Origin: Diadema antillarum | Taxonomy: Eukaryota | Direction: 5' to 3' | NCBI RefSeq assembly: GCF_040938485.1 | Contig: NW_027271042.1 | Span: 930,001-994,000 of the forward strand | DNA: 64,000 nt | Part shown: positions 35,243 to 62,135 of the stretch, piece by piece | Layout: each line of letters begins with the position of its first letter | How positions within the stretch are numbered: the stretch's first letter is position 1 | Translations under genes and position numbers: made by a program | Notes under the pieces: generated by a model | The model's database searches: none | The model's input: the letters and a program-made list of their open reading frames with translations, nothing else | What the model was told of the DNA's origin: nothing

Positions 35243-36267
35243 ATGTCTCCCGTAGTCTGGTTGATTGCCTGTTTCTCGCTCTACCAGCCGTTGCTCACGT
35301 CCTCAAGCACGGAAAGTAACACGACATGTACGTATCTTTTCTTTTTTCTTTTTCTTTTAATGTGGTAGTAGTGGTCTTTTGTTTAAGGATATTTTCGCAG
35401 ATCTTTCTTTCTTCTCAAGCCTCTTTTTTTTTAAAAATAAGCTGCTGAATGCATTGTTGTGAGAGAAAGAAATCATGTCGCACCTTGTTTAATGTACTAG
35501 CCCCGGCCTTAGGTACGGACTGTAAACTTTCTTATATCATACAGCTGTAGTATAAGTCACTACAGTAATGTCTCCCTTAAAAAAGGACAGTGAATAATAA
35601 GACACTATGCAGTAATGTTTGCTAAATGATACCAATCTTTCATTCATTGTGCCTGCAGATTTTACTCTCAACTGCCCGGGGAGGCCACTAACCCTCAGCA
35701 TAAGGGGTGATAGAACAAACATCACCAACAGTATTTGGGTAATAAAAGCCCCTCCAGGACGGCGATTTCTCATTGAAGTTCAGTCTATCAAGGAAAGACT
35801 GATGAAATTTCATATTCAAGATGTCATATCCAACAGAACATTTATGACTGGGCCTGTGGATAAAACAGTCACCGTTTTATCACTGACACATGAGATAAAA
35901 GTGCGTGTACATGGTACCATATATTATAATCCAGCGAATTTTAAGATGAATGTGACATGTTATGACGGTAAGTATCCATTGCCTTGTATGATAAGTATAA
36001 GTGTTTATACACTTTCTCCACGATCTTACTTGAGCAGCGGGTACAAATATTTCTATTTGGAGCTCACATTGTCTAAGTCTTCTGCCGAGAAATAGATGTA
36101 TGCATAGCTTTACTGAGGATAATAATATAATCCTCAGCACGCCTTTACTACGACTCAATGTATTATACACTGAGTCGTAGCAAAGGCATATTAATAAAAG
36201 AACGTGATCTATCTTTTATTCCTCGAATACTACCCAGGAAACATTAGTCTCCTTTTGCCCCTCCCCC

Positions 36268-36309
<42 letters not shown>

Positions 36310-58100: not shown

Positions 58101-61100
58101 ATATATTTTTTAAACAAAGTAATGTATTATTTTCTTGTTTACTTCTCATAGTACTCACAGTATTATCTTCTTCTATGTTTATAAAAATGTGTGATCACCC
58201 AGGTCATGGGTCAAATGTTCACTTGAACGACATTATCAGAAGATCTCGCCATTTAAAAAAAGGTCTAAATTGTAAAGGCAGTTACGTCAGCAATGAGAGA
58301 GATAGCTCATCTACACAGTTTGAAGGTGATTGCATTATGCTTTTTTATCCGTATTGTTGTGATACTTCGTCTTTTTTTTAATGTCCTTAAATCTGTTTAT
58401 CTGAATCGAGACGGTTTTTTTTCCTTTATCGAAAGTTTCTGTTGGATTTTGGAAGCATCTCGGTCCTGTGTGTAAAGAGTTTTTGGATCCTGATATTACG
58501 ATCTTTGGATCAGACATAATCAATTGTGGTCAGAGTTTCTCCCGCATCAGCAGCGCGAACCTTCTGTGTGTGAGACTACCTGGCTGGTCGACTTACTTCC
58601 CGGTTTGGAACTCGTCAGTCCCGTCTTGCCGGGCAATCGATGATGCACTAAACGGTCTGTCGTACAAAGTCATCTTACAGTATGTCATATTTTAGCTCGA
58701 AGCAAACCCCTTTTGAGTCTGTCAGTTAGAGTAGAGAAAGAAACAATAGTTCATCTTGATTAAGAGGATTACATCGTACCAGTCCTGTTTCAAGACTTCA
58801 GTTCACTTGCTCAACATTTAGCAACTGACTAACTGTAAATACAATGTAATTACGTTATTCGTTACTTCTGCCATTACTATTTGCTTAAACTAATTGAAGC
58901 AACAAAATATTGTTTTTAAACGAATTCAGTCGTTGCATAATACTAAGAAAAAGGTTGATTACAGATGCAGGGTAAGGGGGAGGGGCTCCCTCTCTAAAAT
59001 AAAATGATTCAAAAACATTTAAATGCTTTGCACGCGAAACTAATTTCACGTCTTGTTGAACTAGTTTCATTGGTACACCTTTGCAGATAATGAATGTCGT
59101 GATGCCAGAATTAGCACAACACCATCAACAAATATTTGTAAAAGCAACACTTCAAGTGAGTATTGTGCAGGTGCCCACTCAAAATGCTATAATACTATCA
59201 TGAATTATATAGCATTTATGTGCATGTGCCAGGGTGAGGTTCGTATCAAAGCAATACATGTCATCGTGTCAATCTTTTTCCGCGTATAAGTGATTCATTA
59301 AAATGTGGTAAAAAAGCATATTATCGATGAAACATGCTGTTTATTAGGGTGCTGTTCGTTATTCCGAAGGTTCGCTATTCCGAAGGTTCGTTATTCCGAA
59401 GGGTCGTTAATCCGAAACACGCAAAGTCCGTATACCTAGAGGTTCTATTATCTGAAAATGAAAAAGGGTTCGTTAATCCGAAAATTTGTGGCGTTATTCC
59501 GAAGGTTCTCTATTCCGAAGATTGGTTAATCCGGAAATGAAATTCGGAACAATGAACCTTCGGAATAACGAATCTTAGGAACAAAGAGCCTTCGGAATAA
59601 CGAACCTTCGGAATAACGAGCTGTAACCGTTTATTAGACGGAAAAAAATCTTCTGCCAGAAACACAGACAGTGACAGGACAGAAGTGTAGATACACGTCA
59701 CCTTTCTGTATAAGATGGGCATAGAGATGAACTTCGCTTTCCTTCATATTTTGATAGTATAGAGACGTGTGGACGTCATCATCATAAATTGACTTTTATC
59801 CATCCACAAGCAACATTGCAGTTGCACTTACTTAATAGAATTCGTTGCCAGAGAATGGCATTTTAATTTAATTTTCGTGACCTTTGATCGTGACCTTTTA
59901 ACTTTCACCGTTGGTAATGCTGCGTTCATAATATCAAATCTTCATACTCAATTTTTCTGTAAATATGTGGATGCTTCCAGTTAAAATTGGGGACGGAAAT
60001 TACAATCGAATTAAGGAACAGTTAGGTTTGAACTTGACTCTTGACCTCTGAGCACTAAAAGTTCAATGTAAAAACGTCACATAATTTACTATGTCCATCA
60101 TCGAAACTTAATCAGGGCATACGTCATATATTGCATGCCTTGACCGAGAACTAAGAACATGTATTGTTTTTTCTGTTTGTTTTTACAACATTATGTACTT
60201 TACAAAAACTTATCAAAGGATAGCGGTATCTTGTTTCCAGATAATACAGTTTGATTTCATGACGAAGGTTCAATCGGATCGATCATTCTTCTGTTTCTTT
60301 AGGCCTGGAGACAAAATTCATCGCACTGATTATGGTAACCCCTGTCTGTTTCGCAGCCATGATGCTTGTCATTTCATTCATGGCTTGGTGCAATCATCAC
60401 TGGAAAAGGTAAGTGCTGCAATAATCAATTGTTTTTTCATAATATCTTGTGTGTGTGTGTGTTTCCATTTTTCCATTTGGATACATGTACACATAGTGTA
60501 CACCTGTATCTATCTAAATATATGCTTATTTACAATGCAAACAATATGTATTGCAAGTATTGATTTGTAACGAAAACACGTACACACAATTTGAGATACG
60601 TGTAGGTTCTATATCTATTATTGTCCCAAACGCACACATACACACACTCACACAATTTATCGGAAGAAACGAAGGGCAATGGAATATTAACAATCTTTCA
60701 ACATTGGTAAGTAAACATTAAAAAGAGATTAGTTTCATCTGTTTATGCAATTTTATATATATGGGAATTATCCTATAGAATTTTACAACAAAAGTAATCA
60801 TATGCAGTAGTTGTTCTTACATGTGTCGATGTTGTGATGTATTATGACGTATTCCCCTGACATGTTATCTTTCCTTCTTATTGATCAATAGGAAACGCAG
60901 ACGTCAAGAAAATTCAAATAAATCAGATACCCACTCATTGCACTCTATCAATACCGATGCCTGCAAGGTGCATTTCTCTTTGCCGGAACGTCAACTCAAC
61001 AAAACTGGCGACGCCACAGTTAATCGGCAGAGCGAGGATCACGTCTACCAGAATTCTGCAGAGGTAGTCATCGTAGAGTATGTCGTTAAAATATTGTAGC

Positions 61101-62135
61101 AAGTCATTTCTTTTCGACCAAACTCCGTTGTTTTCATATCGTAAGAATACAATAGACTTTAGAAATAAAAATTTCCAAATGTACATCGAACTTTTCCTTG
61201 TATAACTCGGAATAAGATTAGTAGCCATTTAAAAATCAAGGAAATGTTTAAACACCCGTTTATTTCAAAGCTAATGGAGGTAAAATCGGTAAATTCCCAC
61301 TGCACTGAAATTCATTAGAGTCTTAAAAGGGTAAGCCTAATGACGTCATCAATTTTCACTTTATGTGGACGACAATATTCATGGCAGGAAACATTGGTGT
61401 ATTGTGTACTCATTGTTAAGGCACATTGTGTATCTAAGGTTAAAAAGTCAATGTTTATATCTTCAACATGTTTTCCTCTACTCTTCATCGCATTTGGCAC
61501 AGGATCACAGTCATAAATCGGAATTGATCAACGATCCAAAAGACTCGACTTCCCGGTCTCTCCATGACGTCCTACACCGAGATAGTACTAAAGACGACAC
61601 GAAAGACATCTCGCAGTGTCAAGACACGACAGCAGATGCCAAGAAAGGGCAATACATGAACATGACAGAAAATGTGAAGAATAAAAAGGGAGAAGTAAAG
61701 TTAGTTGAATGTAAGGACCTCTCTGCAGCTGAAAACGACGTTGATGAAAACGGTTATTTGATTTCCAATGTAGGCACACGGAGTGCTATGAATAGCAAAC
61801 CTCCAGAAAATTTTGAAGATGGAAAGGCTGGTGGCAACTTTGATAGTGACCAATCTTTCGGAGAAACAATGGGCAAAGGTTTAGTTATCCATTCTAGACC
61901 AGCAGATAACGCTGGTAGATGTGGGATCGTCTACGAAGAGATTCCATCAACTTTGGACCAATCCGCACCCATCAGAAAGCATCCAAGTGACCACGATTAC
62001 TCGACTATCGAGAGAAATAATGATTCTCTTGCGAAGGGCTTGAACGATGCTCTGTATTCTGTTTCAATATACTCAAGCAAGGAAAGAGAAGAGCACGAGT
62101 TCGACGAAAATGGGTATCTTATTCTTGAGGCATGA
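51666..62135 (+). CDS. Receptor paralogue D, complete: SP-CUB-SRCR-WSC-Sushi-TM-Tyr-motif tail, 701 aa
   Basis: Exons 51666-51750, 52131-52439, 54175-54390, 54670-54765, 57482-57751, 58436-58654, 60303-60408, 60892-61063, 61503-62135. Sum 2106 nt, open, GT-AG introns. An N-gap lies in intron 2. Confidence 0.85.
52718..52873. other. Assembly gap (N run) at the position of the intron-2 (AAC)n microsatellite
   Basis: 156 Ns; copies B and C have (AAC)n here (~11375-11420, ~36270-36310). Confidence 0.95.
55178..56226 (-). mobile_element. Same HINE insertion in D intron 4
   Basis: Near-identical to 38573-39620 at the equivalent intron position. Confidence 0.7.
59348..59628. mobile_element. Mutator-like foldback MITE with tandem 15-bp GGTTCGTTATTCCGA subrepeats
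   Basis: GG...CC termini, inverted arrays of the 15-mer, and an exact 9-bp duplication GTTTATTAG (59339-59347, 59629-59637). Absent from A/C intron 6. Confidence 0.75.

What the first reader, a model, noticed from the sequence alone, without database searches (positions are those of the whole stretch)
35243..62135. Tandemly expanded family of CUB-SRCR-WSC-Sushi single-pass receptors with a kinase-less phosphotyrosine tail (candidate invertebrate immune/recognition receptor system)
Seen: four head-to-tail paralogues; C and D splice into intact 700/701-aa ORFs with signal peptide, CUB-like, SRCR, WSC, Sushi-like, uncharged TM and a long Tyr-rich tail. Known: SRCR, WSC (glycan binding), CUB and CCP modules are common in invertebrate recognition proteins, but most SRCR proteins are multi-SRCR or have short tails, and Kremen is Kringle-WSC-CUB. 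I do not recognise this one-of-each, four-module order coupled to an SH2-docking tail as a named family. Inference: a locally amplified, diversifying recognition receptor (pathogen or self/non-self) that signals through recruited SH2 proteins.
Basis: partly seen in the sequence, partly recalled or inferred. Interest (0 to 1): 0.85.

Follow-up and report, generated by a model that had tools for sequence, protein, structure and literature searches.

The report
Diadema SRCR-WSC-Sushi receptors, tyrosine-motif tails
This stretch of long-spined sea urchin (Diadema) DNA carries a tandem array of genes for a cell-surface receptor with four small binding modules outside the cell. Its long inner tail has tyrosines that are kept almost unchanged across a large Diadema-only family, so it is probably a signalling recognition receptor, but its expression, ligand and cell type are unknown.

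Summary
A ~16.5 kb unit is repeated head to tail four times. Copies C (35243-45255) and D (51666-62135) splice through nine canonical GT-AG exons into intact 700 and 701 aa ORFs. Copy A is cut by the window start. Copy B is broken: exons 5-6 are missing and a 1-nt deletion in exon 9 gives an early stop. The N gap at 52718-52873 lies in intron 2 of D and touches no exon.

Domain calls:
- **SRCR:** supported by Pfam.
- **Sushi/CCP:** strongly supported for the family. The window copies have moved the first cysteine.
- **WSC:** modest but consistent support. Kremen, Wsc1 and WSCD1 WSC domains are the top hits by profile and by fold.
- **N-terminal module:** CUB-like by fold only.

In the tail, 7 of 8 tyrosines are 92-100% conserved in 13 distant paralogues, against 36% for the average residue (p = 4e-5).

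The family has more than 40 annotated models, all "uncharacterized" or misnamed, all from D. antillarum or D. setosum. It has two unrelated tail types that interleave on the ectodomain tree.

Best reading: a genus-restricted, concertedly evolving branch of the sea-urchin SRCR superfamily that works like CD5/CD6. Expression and phosphorylation are untested, and positive selection is not shown. The scan noted a similar cluster on another piece of this genome.

The parts
711..4100 (+). Copy A, exons 6-9 only (Sushi, TM, tail). The upstream exons lie before the window start. The reading frame is open.
   Evidence: Exons mapped at 711-884 with my first exon 6 acceptor (the homologous upstream acceptor, as used for C and D, would start ~42 nt earlier), then 2205-2310, 2787-2958 and 3468-4100.
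10357..29213 (+). Copy B, a broken copy. Exons 1-4 and 7-9 are present and exons 5 (WSC) and 6 (Sushi) are absent. A 1-nt deletion after 28628 gives a stop at 28738. The 14 kb intron 4 holds retroelement debris and inverted repeats. A second N gap (27503-27657) lies in intron 7.
   Evidence: RVT_1 reverse transcriptase at 18259-18708 on the minus strand, E 1.6e-22. Inverted repeat 13839-15081 against 19933-18672.
35243..35327 (+). C exon 1: start codon and signal peptide (MSPVVWLIACFSLYQPLL...).
   Evidence: 100% identical to B exon 1.
35659..35967 (+). C exon 2: N-terminal CUB-like beta-sandwich domain (103 aa).
   Evidence: AF2 model pLDDT 77.6, nine strands. Foldseek PDB top hit is spermadhesin CUB 1spp_B, TM 0.73, E 3e-6, followed by CUBs of TSG-6, enteropeptidase, TMPRSS6, neuropilin and MASP. 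AFDB clusters give many CUB proteins. No Pfam hit and no PDB sequence hit.
37591..38181 (+). C exons 3 (37591-37806) and 4 (38086-38181): one SRCR domain with six Cys, split by an intron.
   Evidence: Exon 3 alone scores PF00530 E 2.5e-5 (25.0 bits, cut-off 26.1) and PF15494 E 1.2e-4. Paralogue P0009 scores 29 bits on SRCR_2, above its cut-off of 27.
40866..41135 (+). C exon 5: WSC-like (PAN/apple-type) domain. 100% identical to D exon 5.
   Evidence: Family profile against PDB: top hit is the Kremen1 WSC domain, E 0.35. AF2 pLDDT 77. VIA-align: Kremen WSC Z 6.5, rmsd 2.6 over 74 residues; glyoxal oxidase 9n3u Z 6.5; yeast Wsc1 Z 5.3. AFDB Swiss-Prot gives the WSC domains of WSCD1, Wsck, Kremen1/2 and Wsc3. 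No Pfam hit.
41829..42047 (+). C exon 6: Sushi/CCP-like module. The first Cys is replaced by Trp and a new Cys lies 8 residues downstream (FWKHLGPVC).
   Evidence: Family profile A3 against PDB: CR1 4e-42, vaccinia complement control protein 5e-11, DAF 7e-9. The window exon alone has no Pfam hit. The same Cys shift occurs in the D. setosum orthologue.
43361..43466 (+). C exon 7: uncharged transmembrane helix followed by a KKKRRR stop-transfer.
   Evidence: Highest Kyte-Doolittle window, 2.62, at residue 405.
43945..45255 (+). C exons 8 (43945-44116) and 9 (44626-45255): cytoplasmic tail of 267 aa with seven conserved Tyr motifs: HVYQS, QYMNV, DENGYLISNV, VTYEEI, EYSTI, LYSVSI and DENGYLLLET.
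   Evidence: Tail alignment. Tyr conservation 0.85 against 0.36 for all residues, permutation p = 4e-5. Tail exon 74% identical to D. setosum P0001.
51666..62135 (+). Copy D, an intact 701 aa gene. Exons: 51666-51750, 52131-52439, 54175-54390, 54670-54765, 57482-57751, 58436-58654, 60303-60408, 60892-61063 and 61503-62135.
   Evidence: All junctions GT-AG.
52718..52873 (.). Assembly gap inside intron 2 of copy D. It does not touch coding sequence.
37792..41338 (+). Tract of C that is 98-100% identical to D (exon 4, intron 4, exon 5), flanked by sequence at 66-93% identity. A recent gene-conversion or unequal-exchange tract.
   Evidence: Sliding-window identity.

Best explanation
C and D are functional members of a large family that I found only in Diadema. 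It is a branch of the sea-urchin SRCR superfamily made of single-pass type I receptors. From outside to inside the protein has a signal peptide, a CUB-like beta-sandwich, one six-Cys SRCR, one WSC-like (PAN/apple-type, probably glycan-binding) module, one CCP/Sushi module, an uncharged TM helix and a ~270 aa tail that I expect to be disordered, with no enzyme domain.

Proposed mechanism (inferred). A ligand, glycan or protein, microbial or self, binds and clusters the ectodomain. Src-family kinases phosphorylate the conserved tail tyrosines. The phosphotyrosines then recruit SH2 proteins:
- Y-x-N for a Grb2-type adaptor.
- Y-M-x-M for PI3K p85.
- [V/I/S]-x-Y-E-E-I, which fits both the Src-SH2 optimum and the ITIM consensus.
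- The C-terminal D-E-[N/H/D]-G-Y-L-x-L, which resembles the DEDG + YxxL hemITAM of Dectin-1 and CLEC-2, for a Syk-type kinase.

The receptor would thus act as a kinase-less signalling scaffold, as CD5 and CD6 do in vertebrates. The array evolves by tandem duplication, gene conversion and pseudogenisation.

Shown: gene structure, intact ORFs in two species, domain folds, family size and distribution, tyrosine conservation, purifying selection. Inferred: phosphorylation, SH2 partners, ligand class, immune role.
For: - Intact nine-exon ORFs in C and D, and an intact exon 2-9 orthologue with the same splice sites in D. setosum, followed by a further tandem copy.
- dN/dS of 0.45-0.50 between species, and 0.17 in the WSC module.
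- Domain evidence: SRCR, Sushi, WSC, CUB-like.
- 41 family hits, all from Diadema and spread over several D. setosum chromosome-scale records, many with Pfam SRCR or Sushi.
- Several paralogues carry multiple NCBI isoforms (X1-X4), which suggests transcript support.
- 7 of 8 tail Tyr are conserved at 92-100% while the tail averages 36%.
- Two tail types sit on near-identical ectodomains in adjacent genes, a layout typical of paired immune receptors.
- Echinoderms express Syk, Src-family kinases, Csk, Grb2 and PLC-gamma (PMC11593052).
- CD5 and CD6 are a precedent for SRCR receptors that recruit SH2 adaptors through tail phosphotyrosines (PMC6305463, PMC6376265).
- The DEDG + hemITAM motif is described for Dectin-1 (PMC11624271).
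Against: - I found no transcript or protein evidence for C or D. No database protein matches them closely; the best D. antillarum hit is 63% identical, so they seem to be unannotated in the public gene set.
- Some NCBI models of relatives are chimeras of neighbouring genes: P0006 and P0041.
- The motif-to-SH2 assignments come from vertebrate specificities and were not tested.
- Several motifs also fit YxxPhi endocytic signals.
- dN/dS near 0.5-0.9 in the CUB-like and Sushi modules could reflect relaxed constraint.
- The window's Sushi has lost its canonical first Cys, and the window exons for the CUB-like, WSC and Sushi modules fail Pfam.
- The 100% identical exon 5 in C and D could partly reflect assembly collapse rather than conversion.
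Confidence: 0.6

Rival explanations
1. Egg or sperm surface recognition receptor. The family would mediate gamete recognition, or couple sperm binding to the Src-family kinase and PLC-gamma pathway that releases Ca2+ at echinoderm fertilisation. Its genus restriction and fast protein evolution would reflect reproductive rather than immune pressure.
For: Ca2+ release at fertilisation in echinoderm eggs needs Src-family kinases and the PLC-gamma SH2 domains, and the upstream components are not fully known (PMC11593052, PMC2132564). The tail carries a conserved YEEI-type Src-SH2 motif. The family was found only in Diadema, and dN/dS is fairly high in the ectodomain.
Against: Dozens of paralogues with two tail types on several chromosomes fit an immune-type repertoire better than a gamete lock-and-key pair. 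There are no expression data either way. SRCR expansions in urchins have been linked to coelomocytes (own knowledge; PMC10855680 treats them as immune receptors).
Confidence: 0.12
2. Endocytic scavenger or clearance receptor. The conserved tyrosines would mainly be YxxPhi or acidic-cluster sorting signals for AP-2 and lysosomal routing, and the protein would take up bound cargo rather than signal through SH2 proteins.
For: YEEI, YSTI, YLLL and YMNV all fit YxxPhi, and acidic residues precede several of them. SRCR, CUB and Sushi are common in endocytic receptors (own knowledge).
Against: Seven separately conserved Tyr with distinct, individually conserved flanks (YxN, YMxM, DENGYL twice) are more than sorting needs. 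YQS, YLIS and YSVS lack a hydrophobic +3 residue. Tyr is the most conserved residue type by far.
Confidence: 0.13
3. Decaying or silent array. The window copies would be recent duplicates that are not expressed or are drifting to pseudogenes, like B. Their open frames would persist only because they are young and are patched by gene conversion from expressed paralogues.
For: B is clearly broken. C and D appear to be unannotated. The window subfamily has a degenerate Sushi, has lost the Ser/Thr-rich stalk and has a truncated C terminus compared with other type-1 tails. dN/dS between C and D is 0.57.
Against: The same subfamily features (Cys shift, short C terminus) and an open exon 2-9 frame are kept in D. 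setosum at dS ~0.3 with dN/dS 0.45. All seven Tyr motifs are intact in A, C and D. All 16 splice sites are canonical in both C and D.
Confidence: 0.15

Closest known systems
Sea-urchin SRCR superfamily (expanded multi-domain SRCR genes of Strongylocentrotus purpuratus)
   Same: Both have an SRCR domain combined with Sushi, WSC and CUB-type modules, and both are expanded in an echinoid. PMC10855680 lists Sushi, WSC and CUB among the five domains that most often accompany SRCR in S. purpuratus, and it classified SRCR genes into tandem and scattered groups. The window genes are in tandem.
   Different: This protein has one module of each kind in a fixed order, followed by a TM helix and a conserved multi-tyrosine tail. 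No relative outside Diadema turned up in the searches I could run. The CUB-like, WSC and (in the window) Sushi modules are too diverged for Pfam.
CD5 / CD6 (vertebrate group B SRCR receptors)
   Same: Both are type I membrane proteins with an SRCR ectodomain and a long tail that has no catalytic domain. CD5 and CD6 work as scaffolds by recruiting SH2 adaptors to phosphotyrosines (PMC6305463, PMC6376265).
   Different: CD5 and CD6 have three group B (8-Cys) SRCR domains and nothing else outside the cell. Here there is one six-Cys SRCR flanked by CUB-like, WSC and Sushi modules. There is no sequence similarity in the tails. This is an analogy, not orthology.
Kremen1 / Kremen2
   Same: Both are single-pass receptors whose ectodomain contains a WSC and a CUB domain. 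The Kremen WSC domain is the best sequence-profile hit and the best structural hit for exon 5.
   Different: Kremen is Kringle-WSC-CUB with a short tail. Here there is no kringle, the CUB-like module comes first, SRCR and Sushi are added, and the tail is long and Tyr-rich.
hemITAM C-type lectin receptors (Dectin-1, CLEC-2)
   Same: The tail motif D-E-[N/H/D]-G-Y-L-x-L resembles the tri-acidic DEDG followed by the YxxL hemITAM that recruits Syk (PMC11624271).
   Different: Those receptors are type II C-type lectins with short N-terminal tails. Here the motif occurs twice, about 120 residues apart, in a long C-terminal tail. The first copy has Ser at +3. Syk binding is untested.
Paired activating/inhibitory immune receptor families (KIR, SIRP, Siglec-type logic)
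   Same: Adjacent genes have 90-98% identical ectodomain exons but unrelated cytoplasmic tails. Tail type changes at least 5 times on the ectodomain tree.
   Different: Neither tail is a short, charged-TM adaptor-coupled form. Both are long Tyr-motif tails, and which one (if either) is inhibitory is unknown. All four copies in this window carry the same tail type.

Membership tests
SRCR superfamily | At least one SRCR domain recognised by PF00530 or PF15494 | tested here: met
   Window exon 3, which holds the N-terminal 70% of the domain, scores PF00530 E 2.5e-5 (25.0 bits against a cut-off of 26.1). Paralogue P0009 scores 29 bits on PF15494, above its cut-off of 27. Many family members carry precomputed SRCR or SRCR_2 hits.
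SRCR superfamily | Six (group A) or eight (group B) conserved cysteines | tested here: met
   There are six Cys in the spliced exon 3+4 domain of C and D, and the paralogues align. The usual Trp-rich core motif is diverged.
CUB domain (PF00431) | Sequence match to the CUB profile | tested here: not met
   No Pfam hit at E <= 1 for the exon 2 product or for P0006, which contains the domain. No PDB sequence hit with profile A1. Only one hit, a Diadema paralogue, among 1.84 billion representatives.
CUB domain (PF00431) | CUB beta-sandwich fold | tested here: met
   The AF2 model (pLDDT 77.6) matches spermadhesin CUB at TM 0.73, E 3e-6, along with many other CUBs. GOLD, PPC and CPE-type sandwiches also appear at similar scores.
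CUB domain (PF00431) | Four conserved Cys forming two disulfides | tested here: not met
   Only two invariant Cys, at positions 5 and 100 of the domain.
WSC domain (PF01822) | Sequence match to the WSC profile | tested here: inconclusive
   No Pfam hit and none precomputed for any paralogue. The family profile's top PDB hit is the WSC domain of Kremen1, aligned on the PG-LGCY...C-S-C...C-C motif, but only at E 0.35.
WSC domain (PF01822) | WSC (PAN/apple-like) fold | tested here: met
   VIA-align: Kremen WSC Z 6.5 (rmsd 2.6 over 74 residues), glyoxal oxidase 9n3u Z 6.5, Wsc1 Z 5.3, then PAN/apple domains. Every AFDB Swiss-Prot hit with probability above 0.5 falls on a WSC domain. Z below 8 is middling, so this rests on consistency across methods.
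Sushi / CCP (PF00084) | Sequence match to CCP modules | tested here: met
   Family profile A3, with the window copies as its first rows, gives CR1 4e-42, vaccinia complement control protein 5e-11 and DAF 7e-9. Many paralogues carry precomputed PF00084. The window exon alone has no Pfam hit.
Sushi / CCP (PF00084) | Four Cys at canonical positions plus the conserved Trp | tested here: not met
   In the window copies and the D. setosum orthologue the first Cys is Trp, and a Cys appears 8 residues later. Cys 2-4 and the Trp are kept. Other paralogues are canonical.
Kremen family | Kringle-WSC-CUB order with a kringle domain | tested here: not met
   No kringle was detected, and the domain order is CUB-like, SRCR, WSC, Sushi.
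Receptor tyrosine kinases / Wsck-type pseudokinases | Cytoplasmic kinase or pseudokinase domain | tested here: not met
   No kinase family hit in the tail exons or in paralogue tails.
ITIM/ITAM/hemITAM-type immunoreceptors (functional class) | Tail tyrosines that are phosphorylated and bind SH2 proteins | not testable with these tools
   Only motif conservation could be shown.

The most novel reading that the evidence does not exclude
Diadema has built its own immunoreceptor system: a family, found so far only in this genus, of CUB-like/SRCR/WSC/Sushi receptors that come as adjacent pairs with near-identical ectodomains but alternative signalling tails. The type-1 tail, carried by all four copies in this window, would be a multi-SH2 docking scaffold (Grb2, PI3K, Src or SHP, and a hemITAM-like Syk site). 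That would make it an echinoderm counterpart of paired-receptor and CD6-type signalosome logic, evolved independently. It would be of direct interest for a species that suffers pathogen-driven mass die-offs.
Probability: 0.3. Interest if true: 0.72.

Novelty: new variant of a known kind. Interest (0 to 1): 0.5.

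Why it matters
Sea urchins are known for very large innate-immune gene repertoires, including hundreds of SRCR genes, but how those receptors signal is largely unknown. This family offers concrete, testable handles. It has a fixed four-module ectodomain. Its tail has seven tyrosines that are almost invariant across paralogues which otherwise share about a third of their tail residues. 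Neighbouring genes reuse one ectodomain with two different tails. If the tyrosines do dock SH2 proteins, this would be a clear case of kinase-less phosphotyrosine immunoreceptor signalling in an echinoderm. It would also give candidate recognition receptors in Diadema antillarum, a keystone reef grazer. The public annotation of these genes is poor (fragments, chimeras, unannotated copies), so corrected models have practical value. If the family turns out to be gamete-related, it would bear on the missing receptor upstream of Src and PLC-gamma at fertilisation.

Tried and rejected
- Exon-by-exon Pfam scans found only the SRCR; the CUB, WSC and Sushi exons gave nothing.
- My first exon 6 acceptor (41871) gave 686 aa. 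I dropped it for 41829 after comparison with paralogues.
- The single HMMER search of 1.84 billion representatives with the CUB-like exon returned one protein. It is a mis-merged NCBI model that joins the tail of one gene to exon 2 of the next.
- I could not submit the full spliced C or D proteins to the database or folding tools, because they have no reference and long sequences may not be typed. All tool evidence on the window genes is therefore exon by exon or through paralogues.
- I looked for type-2 tail exons, stalk exons or any further family exons in the window, including around the gap. There are none.
- I looked up P0010 and P0014 by exact product and found neither on record, because they are not the longest isoforms. 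I used P0051 and P0053 instead.
- Test for positive selection: pairwise dN/dS is below 1 everywhere except one 35-codon TM comparison. I ran no site models.
- I considered a Kremen-like Wnt co-receptor, a receptor kinase or pseudokinase, and a secreted multi-SRCR protein. All were rejected on architecture.
- Paper searches for this architecture in echinoderms found only the bulk SRCR survey.

Full report
**Source and repeat structure.** The window is echinoid DNA. The closest database proteins are NCBI models from Diadema antillarum and D. setosum, in agreement with earlier notes of this scan. Self-comparison shows a ~16.5 kb unit repeated four times head to tail on the + strand. There are two N runs, at 27503-27657 and 52718-52873.

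**Gene models.**
- Starting from open frames, GT-AG sites and phase continuity, I built a nine-exon model for copy C and carried it over to the other copies.
- My first model encoded 686 aa. Comparison with paralogue proteins showed that exon 6 starts at the upstream acceptor (41829 in C, 58436 in D).
- All ectodomain exons are phase 1-1, one module per exon, except that the SRCR is split in two.
- Copy A is cut by the window start, and its exons 6-9 are open.
- Copy B lacks exons 5 and 6. Its 14 kb intron 4 holds a reverse-transcriptase fragment (RVT_1, E 1.6e-22) and inverted repeats. It also has a 1-nt deletion after 28628 that puts a stop at 28738, removing six of the seven conserved tail tyrosines. 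B is a broken copy.

**The assembly gap.**
- 52718-52873 lies between D exon 2 (ends 52439, donor GTAAGT) and D exon 3 (starts 54175).
- The flanks align with C on both sides.
- The matching C segment, 36244-36385, is a CAA-type microsatellite.
- A tBLASTn of all 49 family proteins then held finds no exon there in B, C or D. The D. setosum orthologue has none in that interval either.
- The gap therefore does not bear on D's reading frame, barring an extra D-specific exon hidden in it. I did not try to fill it.

**Domains.**

| Module | Evidence |
|---|---|
| SRCR (exons 3+4) | Exon 3 alone scores PF00530 at E 2.5e-5, 25.0 bits, just under the 26.1 cut-off because it holds only 70% of the domain. 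P0009 passes the SRCR_2 cut-off (29 against 27 bits). The spliced domain has six Cys. |
| Sushi/CCP (exon 6) | A 22-sequence family profile headed by the window copies hits CCP modules strongly: CR1 4e-42, vaccinia complement control protein 5e-11, DAF 7e-9. In the window subfamily and its D. setosum orthologue the first Cys is Trp and a Cys appears 8 residues later. The window exon alone fails Pfam. |
| WSC (exon 5) | Pfam is silent. The family profile's best PDB hit is the Kremen1 WSC domain on the PG-LGCY motif (E 0.35). An AF2 model (pLDDT 77) finds Kremen first by Foldseek (probability 0.9). In AFDB Swiss-Prot only WSC domains score above probability 0.5 (WSCD1, Wsck, Kremen1/2, Wsc3). 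An exhaustive VIA-align search gives Kremen WSC Z 6.5, glyoxal oxidase 9n3u Z 6.5 and yeast Wsc1 Z 5.3, then PAN/apple domains. |
| N-terminal module (exon 2) | No sequence relative outside Diadema among 1.84 billion representatives, and no Pfam or PDB sequence hit. Its AF2 model (pLDDT 77.6, nine strands) matches CUB domains best (1spp_B TM 0.73, E 3e-6; also TSG-6, enteropeptidase, TMPRSS6, neuropilin, MASP). Other small beta-sandwiches score nearby. It has two invariant Cys, not the four of a CUB. |

For WSC, each score is modest but three methods agree, so I accept "WSC-like". For the N-terminal module, "CUB-like" is a statement about fold, not family membership.

**Membrane topology.** The strongest hydrophobic window is an uncharged 26-residue span followed by KKKRRR. 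The second strongest is at the N terminus. The ectodomain has ten N-glycosylation sequons.

**The family.**
- A search with paralogue P0009 returned 41 proteins. All are from D. antillarum or D. setosum, on several D. setosum chromosome-scale records. They are named "uncharacterized" or misnamed (E-selectin-like, C4b-binding-protein-like).
- None is closer than 63% (D. antillarum) or 74% (D. setosum, tail only) to C or D. The window genes therefore seem to be unannotated.
- Several NCBI models are fragments or chimeras. P0006 joins one gene's tail to the next gene's exon 2. P0041 mixes exons of different tandem copies.
- D. setosum locus L003 holds an intact orthologue (exons 2-9, same splice sites) followed by another tandem copy.
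- dN/dS against it is 0.45-0.50 overall, 0.17 in WSC and 0.7-0.8 in the CUB-like and Sushi modules. C against D gives 0.57.
- dS varies from 0.15 to 0.8 between exons, and a 3.6 kb tract is 98-100% identical between C and D. Both show mosaic, concerted evolution.
- Diversifying selection is not demonstrated.

**The tail.**
- No Pfam family matches any tail.
- Across type-1 tails, seven tyrosine positions are conserved with their flanks: H-x-Y-Q/E-N, Y-M-D/N-M, D-E-N/D/H-G-Y-L-x-S-N-V, [S/V/I]-x-Y-E/H/Q-E/D-I, Y-S/W-T/N-I, L-Y-S/A-V/A-S-I and D-E-N/H-G-Y-L-V/L-L-E.
- Measured against 13 distant paralogues, the residues of C's 271-residue cytoplasmic segment (from HQWKK) are 36% conserved on average. 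Its tyrosines are 85% conserved, with 7 of 8 at 92-100%. Tyr is the most conserved residue type by a wide margin (permutation p = 4e-5).
- This is the strongest functional signal in the locus.
- By vertebrate SH2 specificities (established knowledge, not tested here) the motifs read as follows. Y-x-N is Grb2-type. Y-M-x-M is PI3K p85-type. Y-E-E-I is the Src-SH2 optimum and also fits the ITIM consensus. The last motif is hemITAM-like, as in the DEDG + YxxL of Dectin-1 (PMC11624271).
- Echinoderms express Syk, Src-family kinases, Csk, Grb2 and PLC-gamma (PMC11593052).

**Two tail types.**
- Many paralogues carry an unrelated type-2 tail (LFDDSCYNSLNF..., repeated ELYA-x-V-D/N-K, terminal LYMNVT).
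- On an ectodomain tree the two types interleave. Strongly supported branches force at least five changes, and the clustering is no better than for shuffled labels.
- One pair was checked at the DNA level. P0051 (type 1) and P0053 (type 2) are adjacent genes 18 kb apart on the same strand. Each has its own full exon set. Their ectodomain exons are 90-98% identical and their tails are unrelated.
- This resembles paired immune receptors.
- All four copies in this window are type 1, and the window has no type-2 exons.

**Comparison with what is known.**
- The SRCR superfamily is massively expanded in sea urchins. Sushi, WSC and CUB are among the five domains most often combined with SRCR in S. 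purpuratus (PMC10855680). The module set is therefore not new.
- I could not find the following described anywhere: the fixed one-of-each order, the Diadema-only distribution (within the limits of my searches), the conserved multi-tyrosine tail and the alternative tails.
- The nearest functional analogues are CD5 and CD6, which are SRCR ectodomains with long kinase-less tails that dock SH2 adaptors (PMC6305463, PMC6376265).
- Kremen shares WSC + CUB on a single-pass receptor, but it has a kringle, a different order and a short tail.

**Verdict.** I read it as a new, lineage-restricted variant within the sea-urchin SRCR receptor superfamily that most likely signals through phosphotyrosine docking (confidence ~0.6). 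An immune role is plausible but unproven. Gamete recognition, endocytic clearance and a silent or decaying array remain open. The scan has also noted a similar cluster on another piece of this genome.

Noticed in passing
L007 and L008 (D. antillarum JBFRCO010000009.1, ~2.44-2.50 Mb): Two adjacent same-strand family genes (P0051 and P0053) have 90-98% identical ectodomain exons but unrelated cytoplasmic tails, type 1 against type 2. On the ectodomain tree, tail type changes at least 5 times. This looks like a paired-receptor layout.
   Followed up: partly
P0006/P0007 (L002, L006) and P0041 (L003): These NCBI gene models of the family are chimeric. P0006 fuses the tail of one gene to exon 2 of the next tandem gene. 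P0041 takes exon 5 from one D. setosum copy and its other exons from other copies. Most models also start at an internal Met at the end of exon 2 and so miss the signal peptide and the CUB-like domain.
   Followed up: partly
window 13298-27256 (intron 4 of copy B): A 14 kb insertion-rich interval replaces the WSC and Sushi exons. It holds a reverse-transcriptase fragment (18259-18708, minus strand, RVT_1 E 1.6e-22), a 1.2 kb inverted repeat (13839-15081 against 19933-18672) and a GC-rich block at ~20-26 kb (GC 0.42-0.46 against ~0.36).
   Followed up: partly
window 45256-45363, 4102-4173 and 62136-62226: Just past the stop codons of A, C and D the DNA still resembles the C-terminal extension of other type-1 tails (…GEIVEDRYVNMDKV…LYENEI). 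The window subfamily and its D. setosum orthologue therefore ended their tails early and lost two further Tyr motifs.
   Followed up: partly
window 38530-38570 and 55110-55180; also 36208-36345: AAT/CAA-type microsatellites in introns 2 and 4 differ in length between copies. The intron 2 microsatellite coincides with the assembly gap in copy D.
   Followed up: no
window 39440-39640 and 56050-56250: A short tandem repeat in intron 4 reads as (RTDG/VRPS)n in several frames on both strands. It is present in both C and D and is probably a minisatellite or a transposon remnant.
   Followed up: no
P0015, P0017, P0022, P0030, P0032, P0038, P0043 (D. setosum and D. antillarum): Some family relatives carry several tandem Sushi modules after the WSC domain (P0015 has about five), or are short models dominated by Sushi that NCBI names E-selectin-like, C4BP-like or CR1-like. 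The family therefore also varies in Sushi copy number.
   Followed up: no
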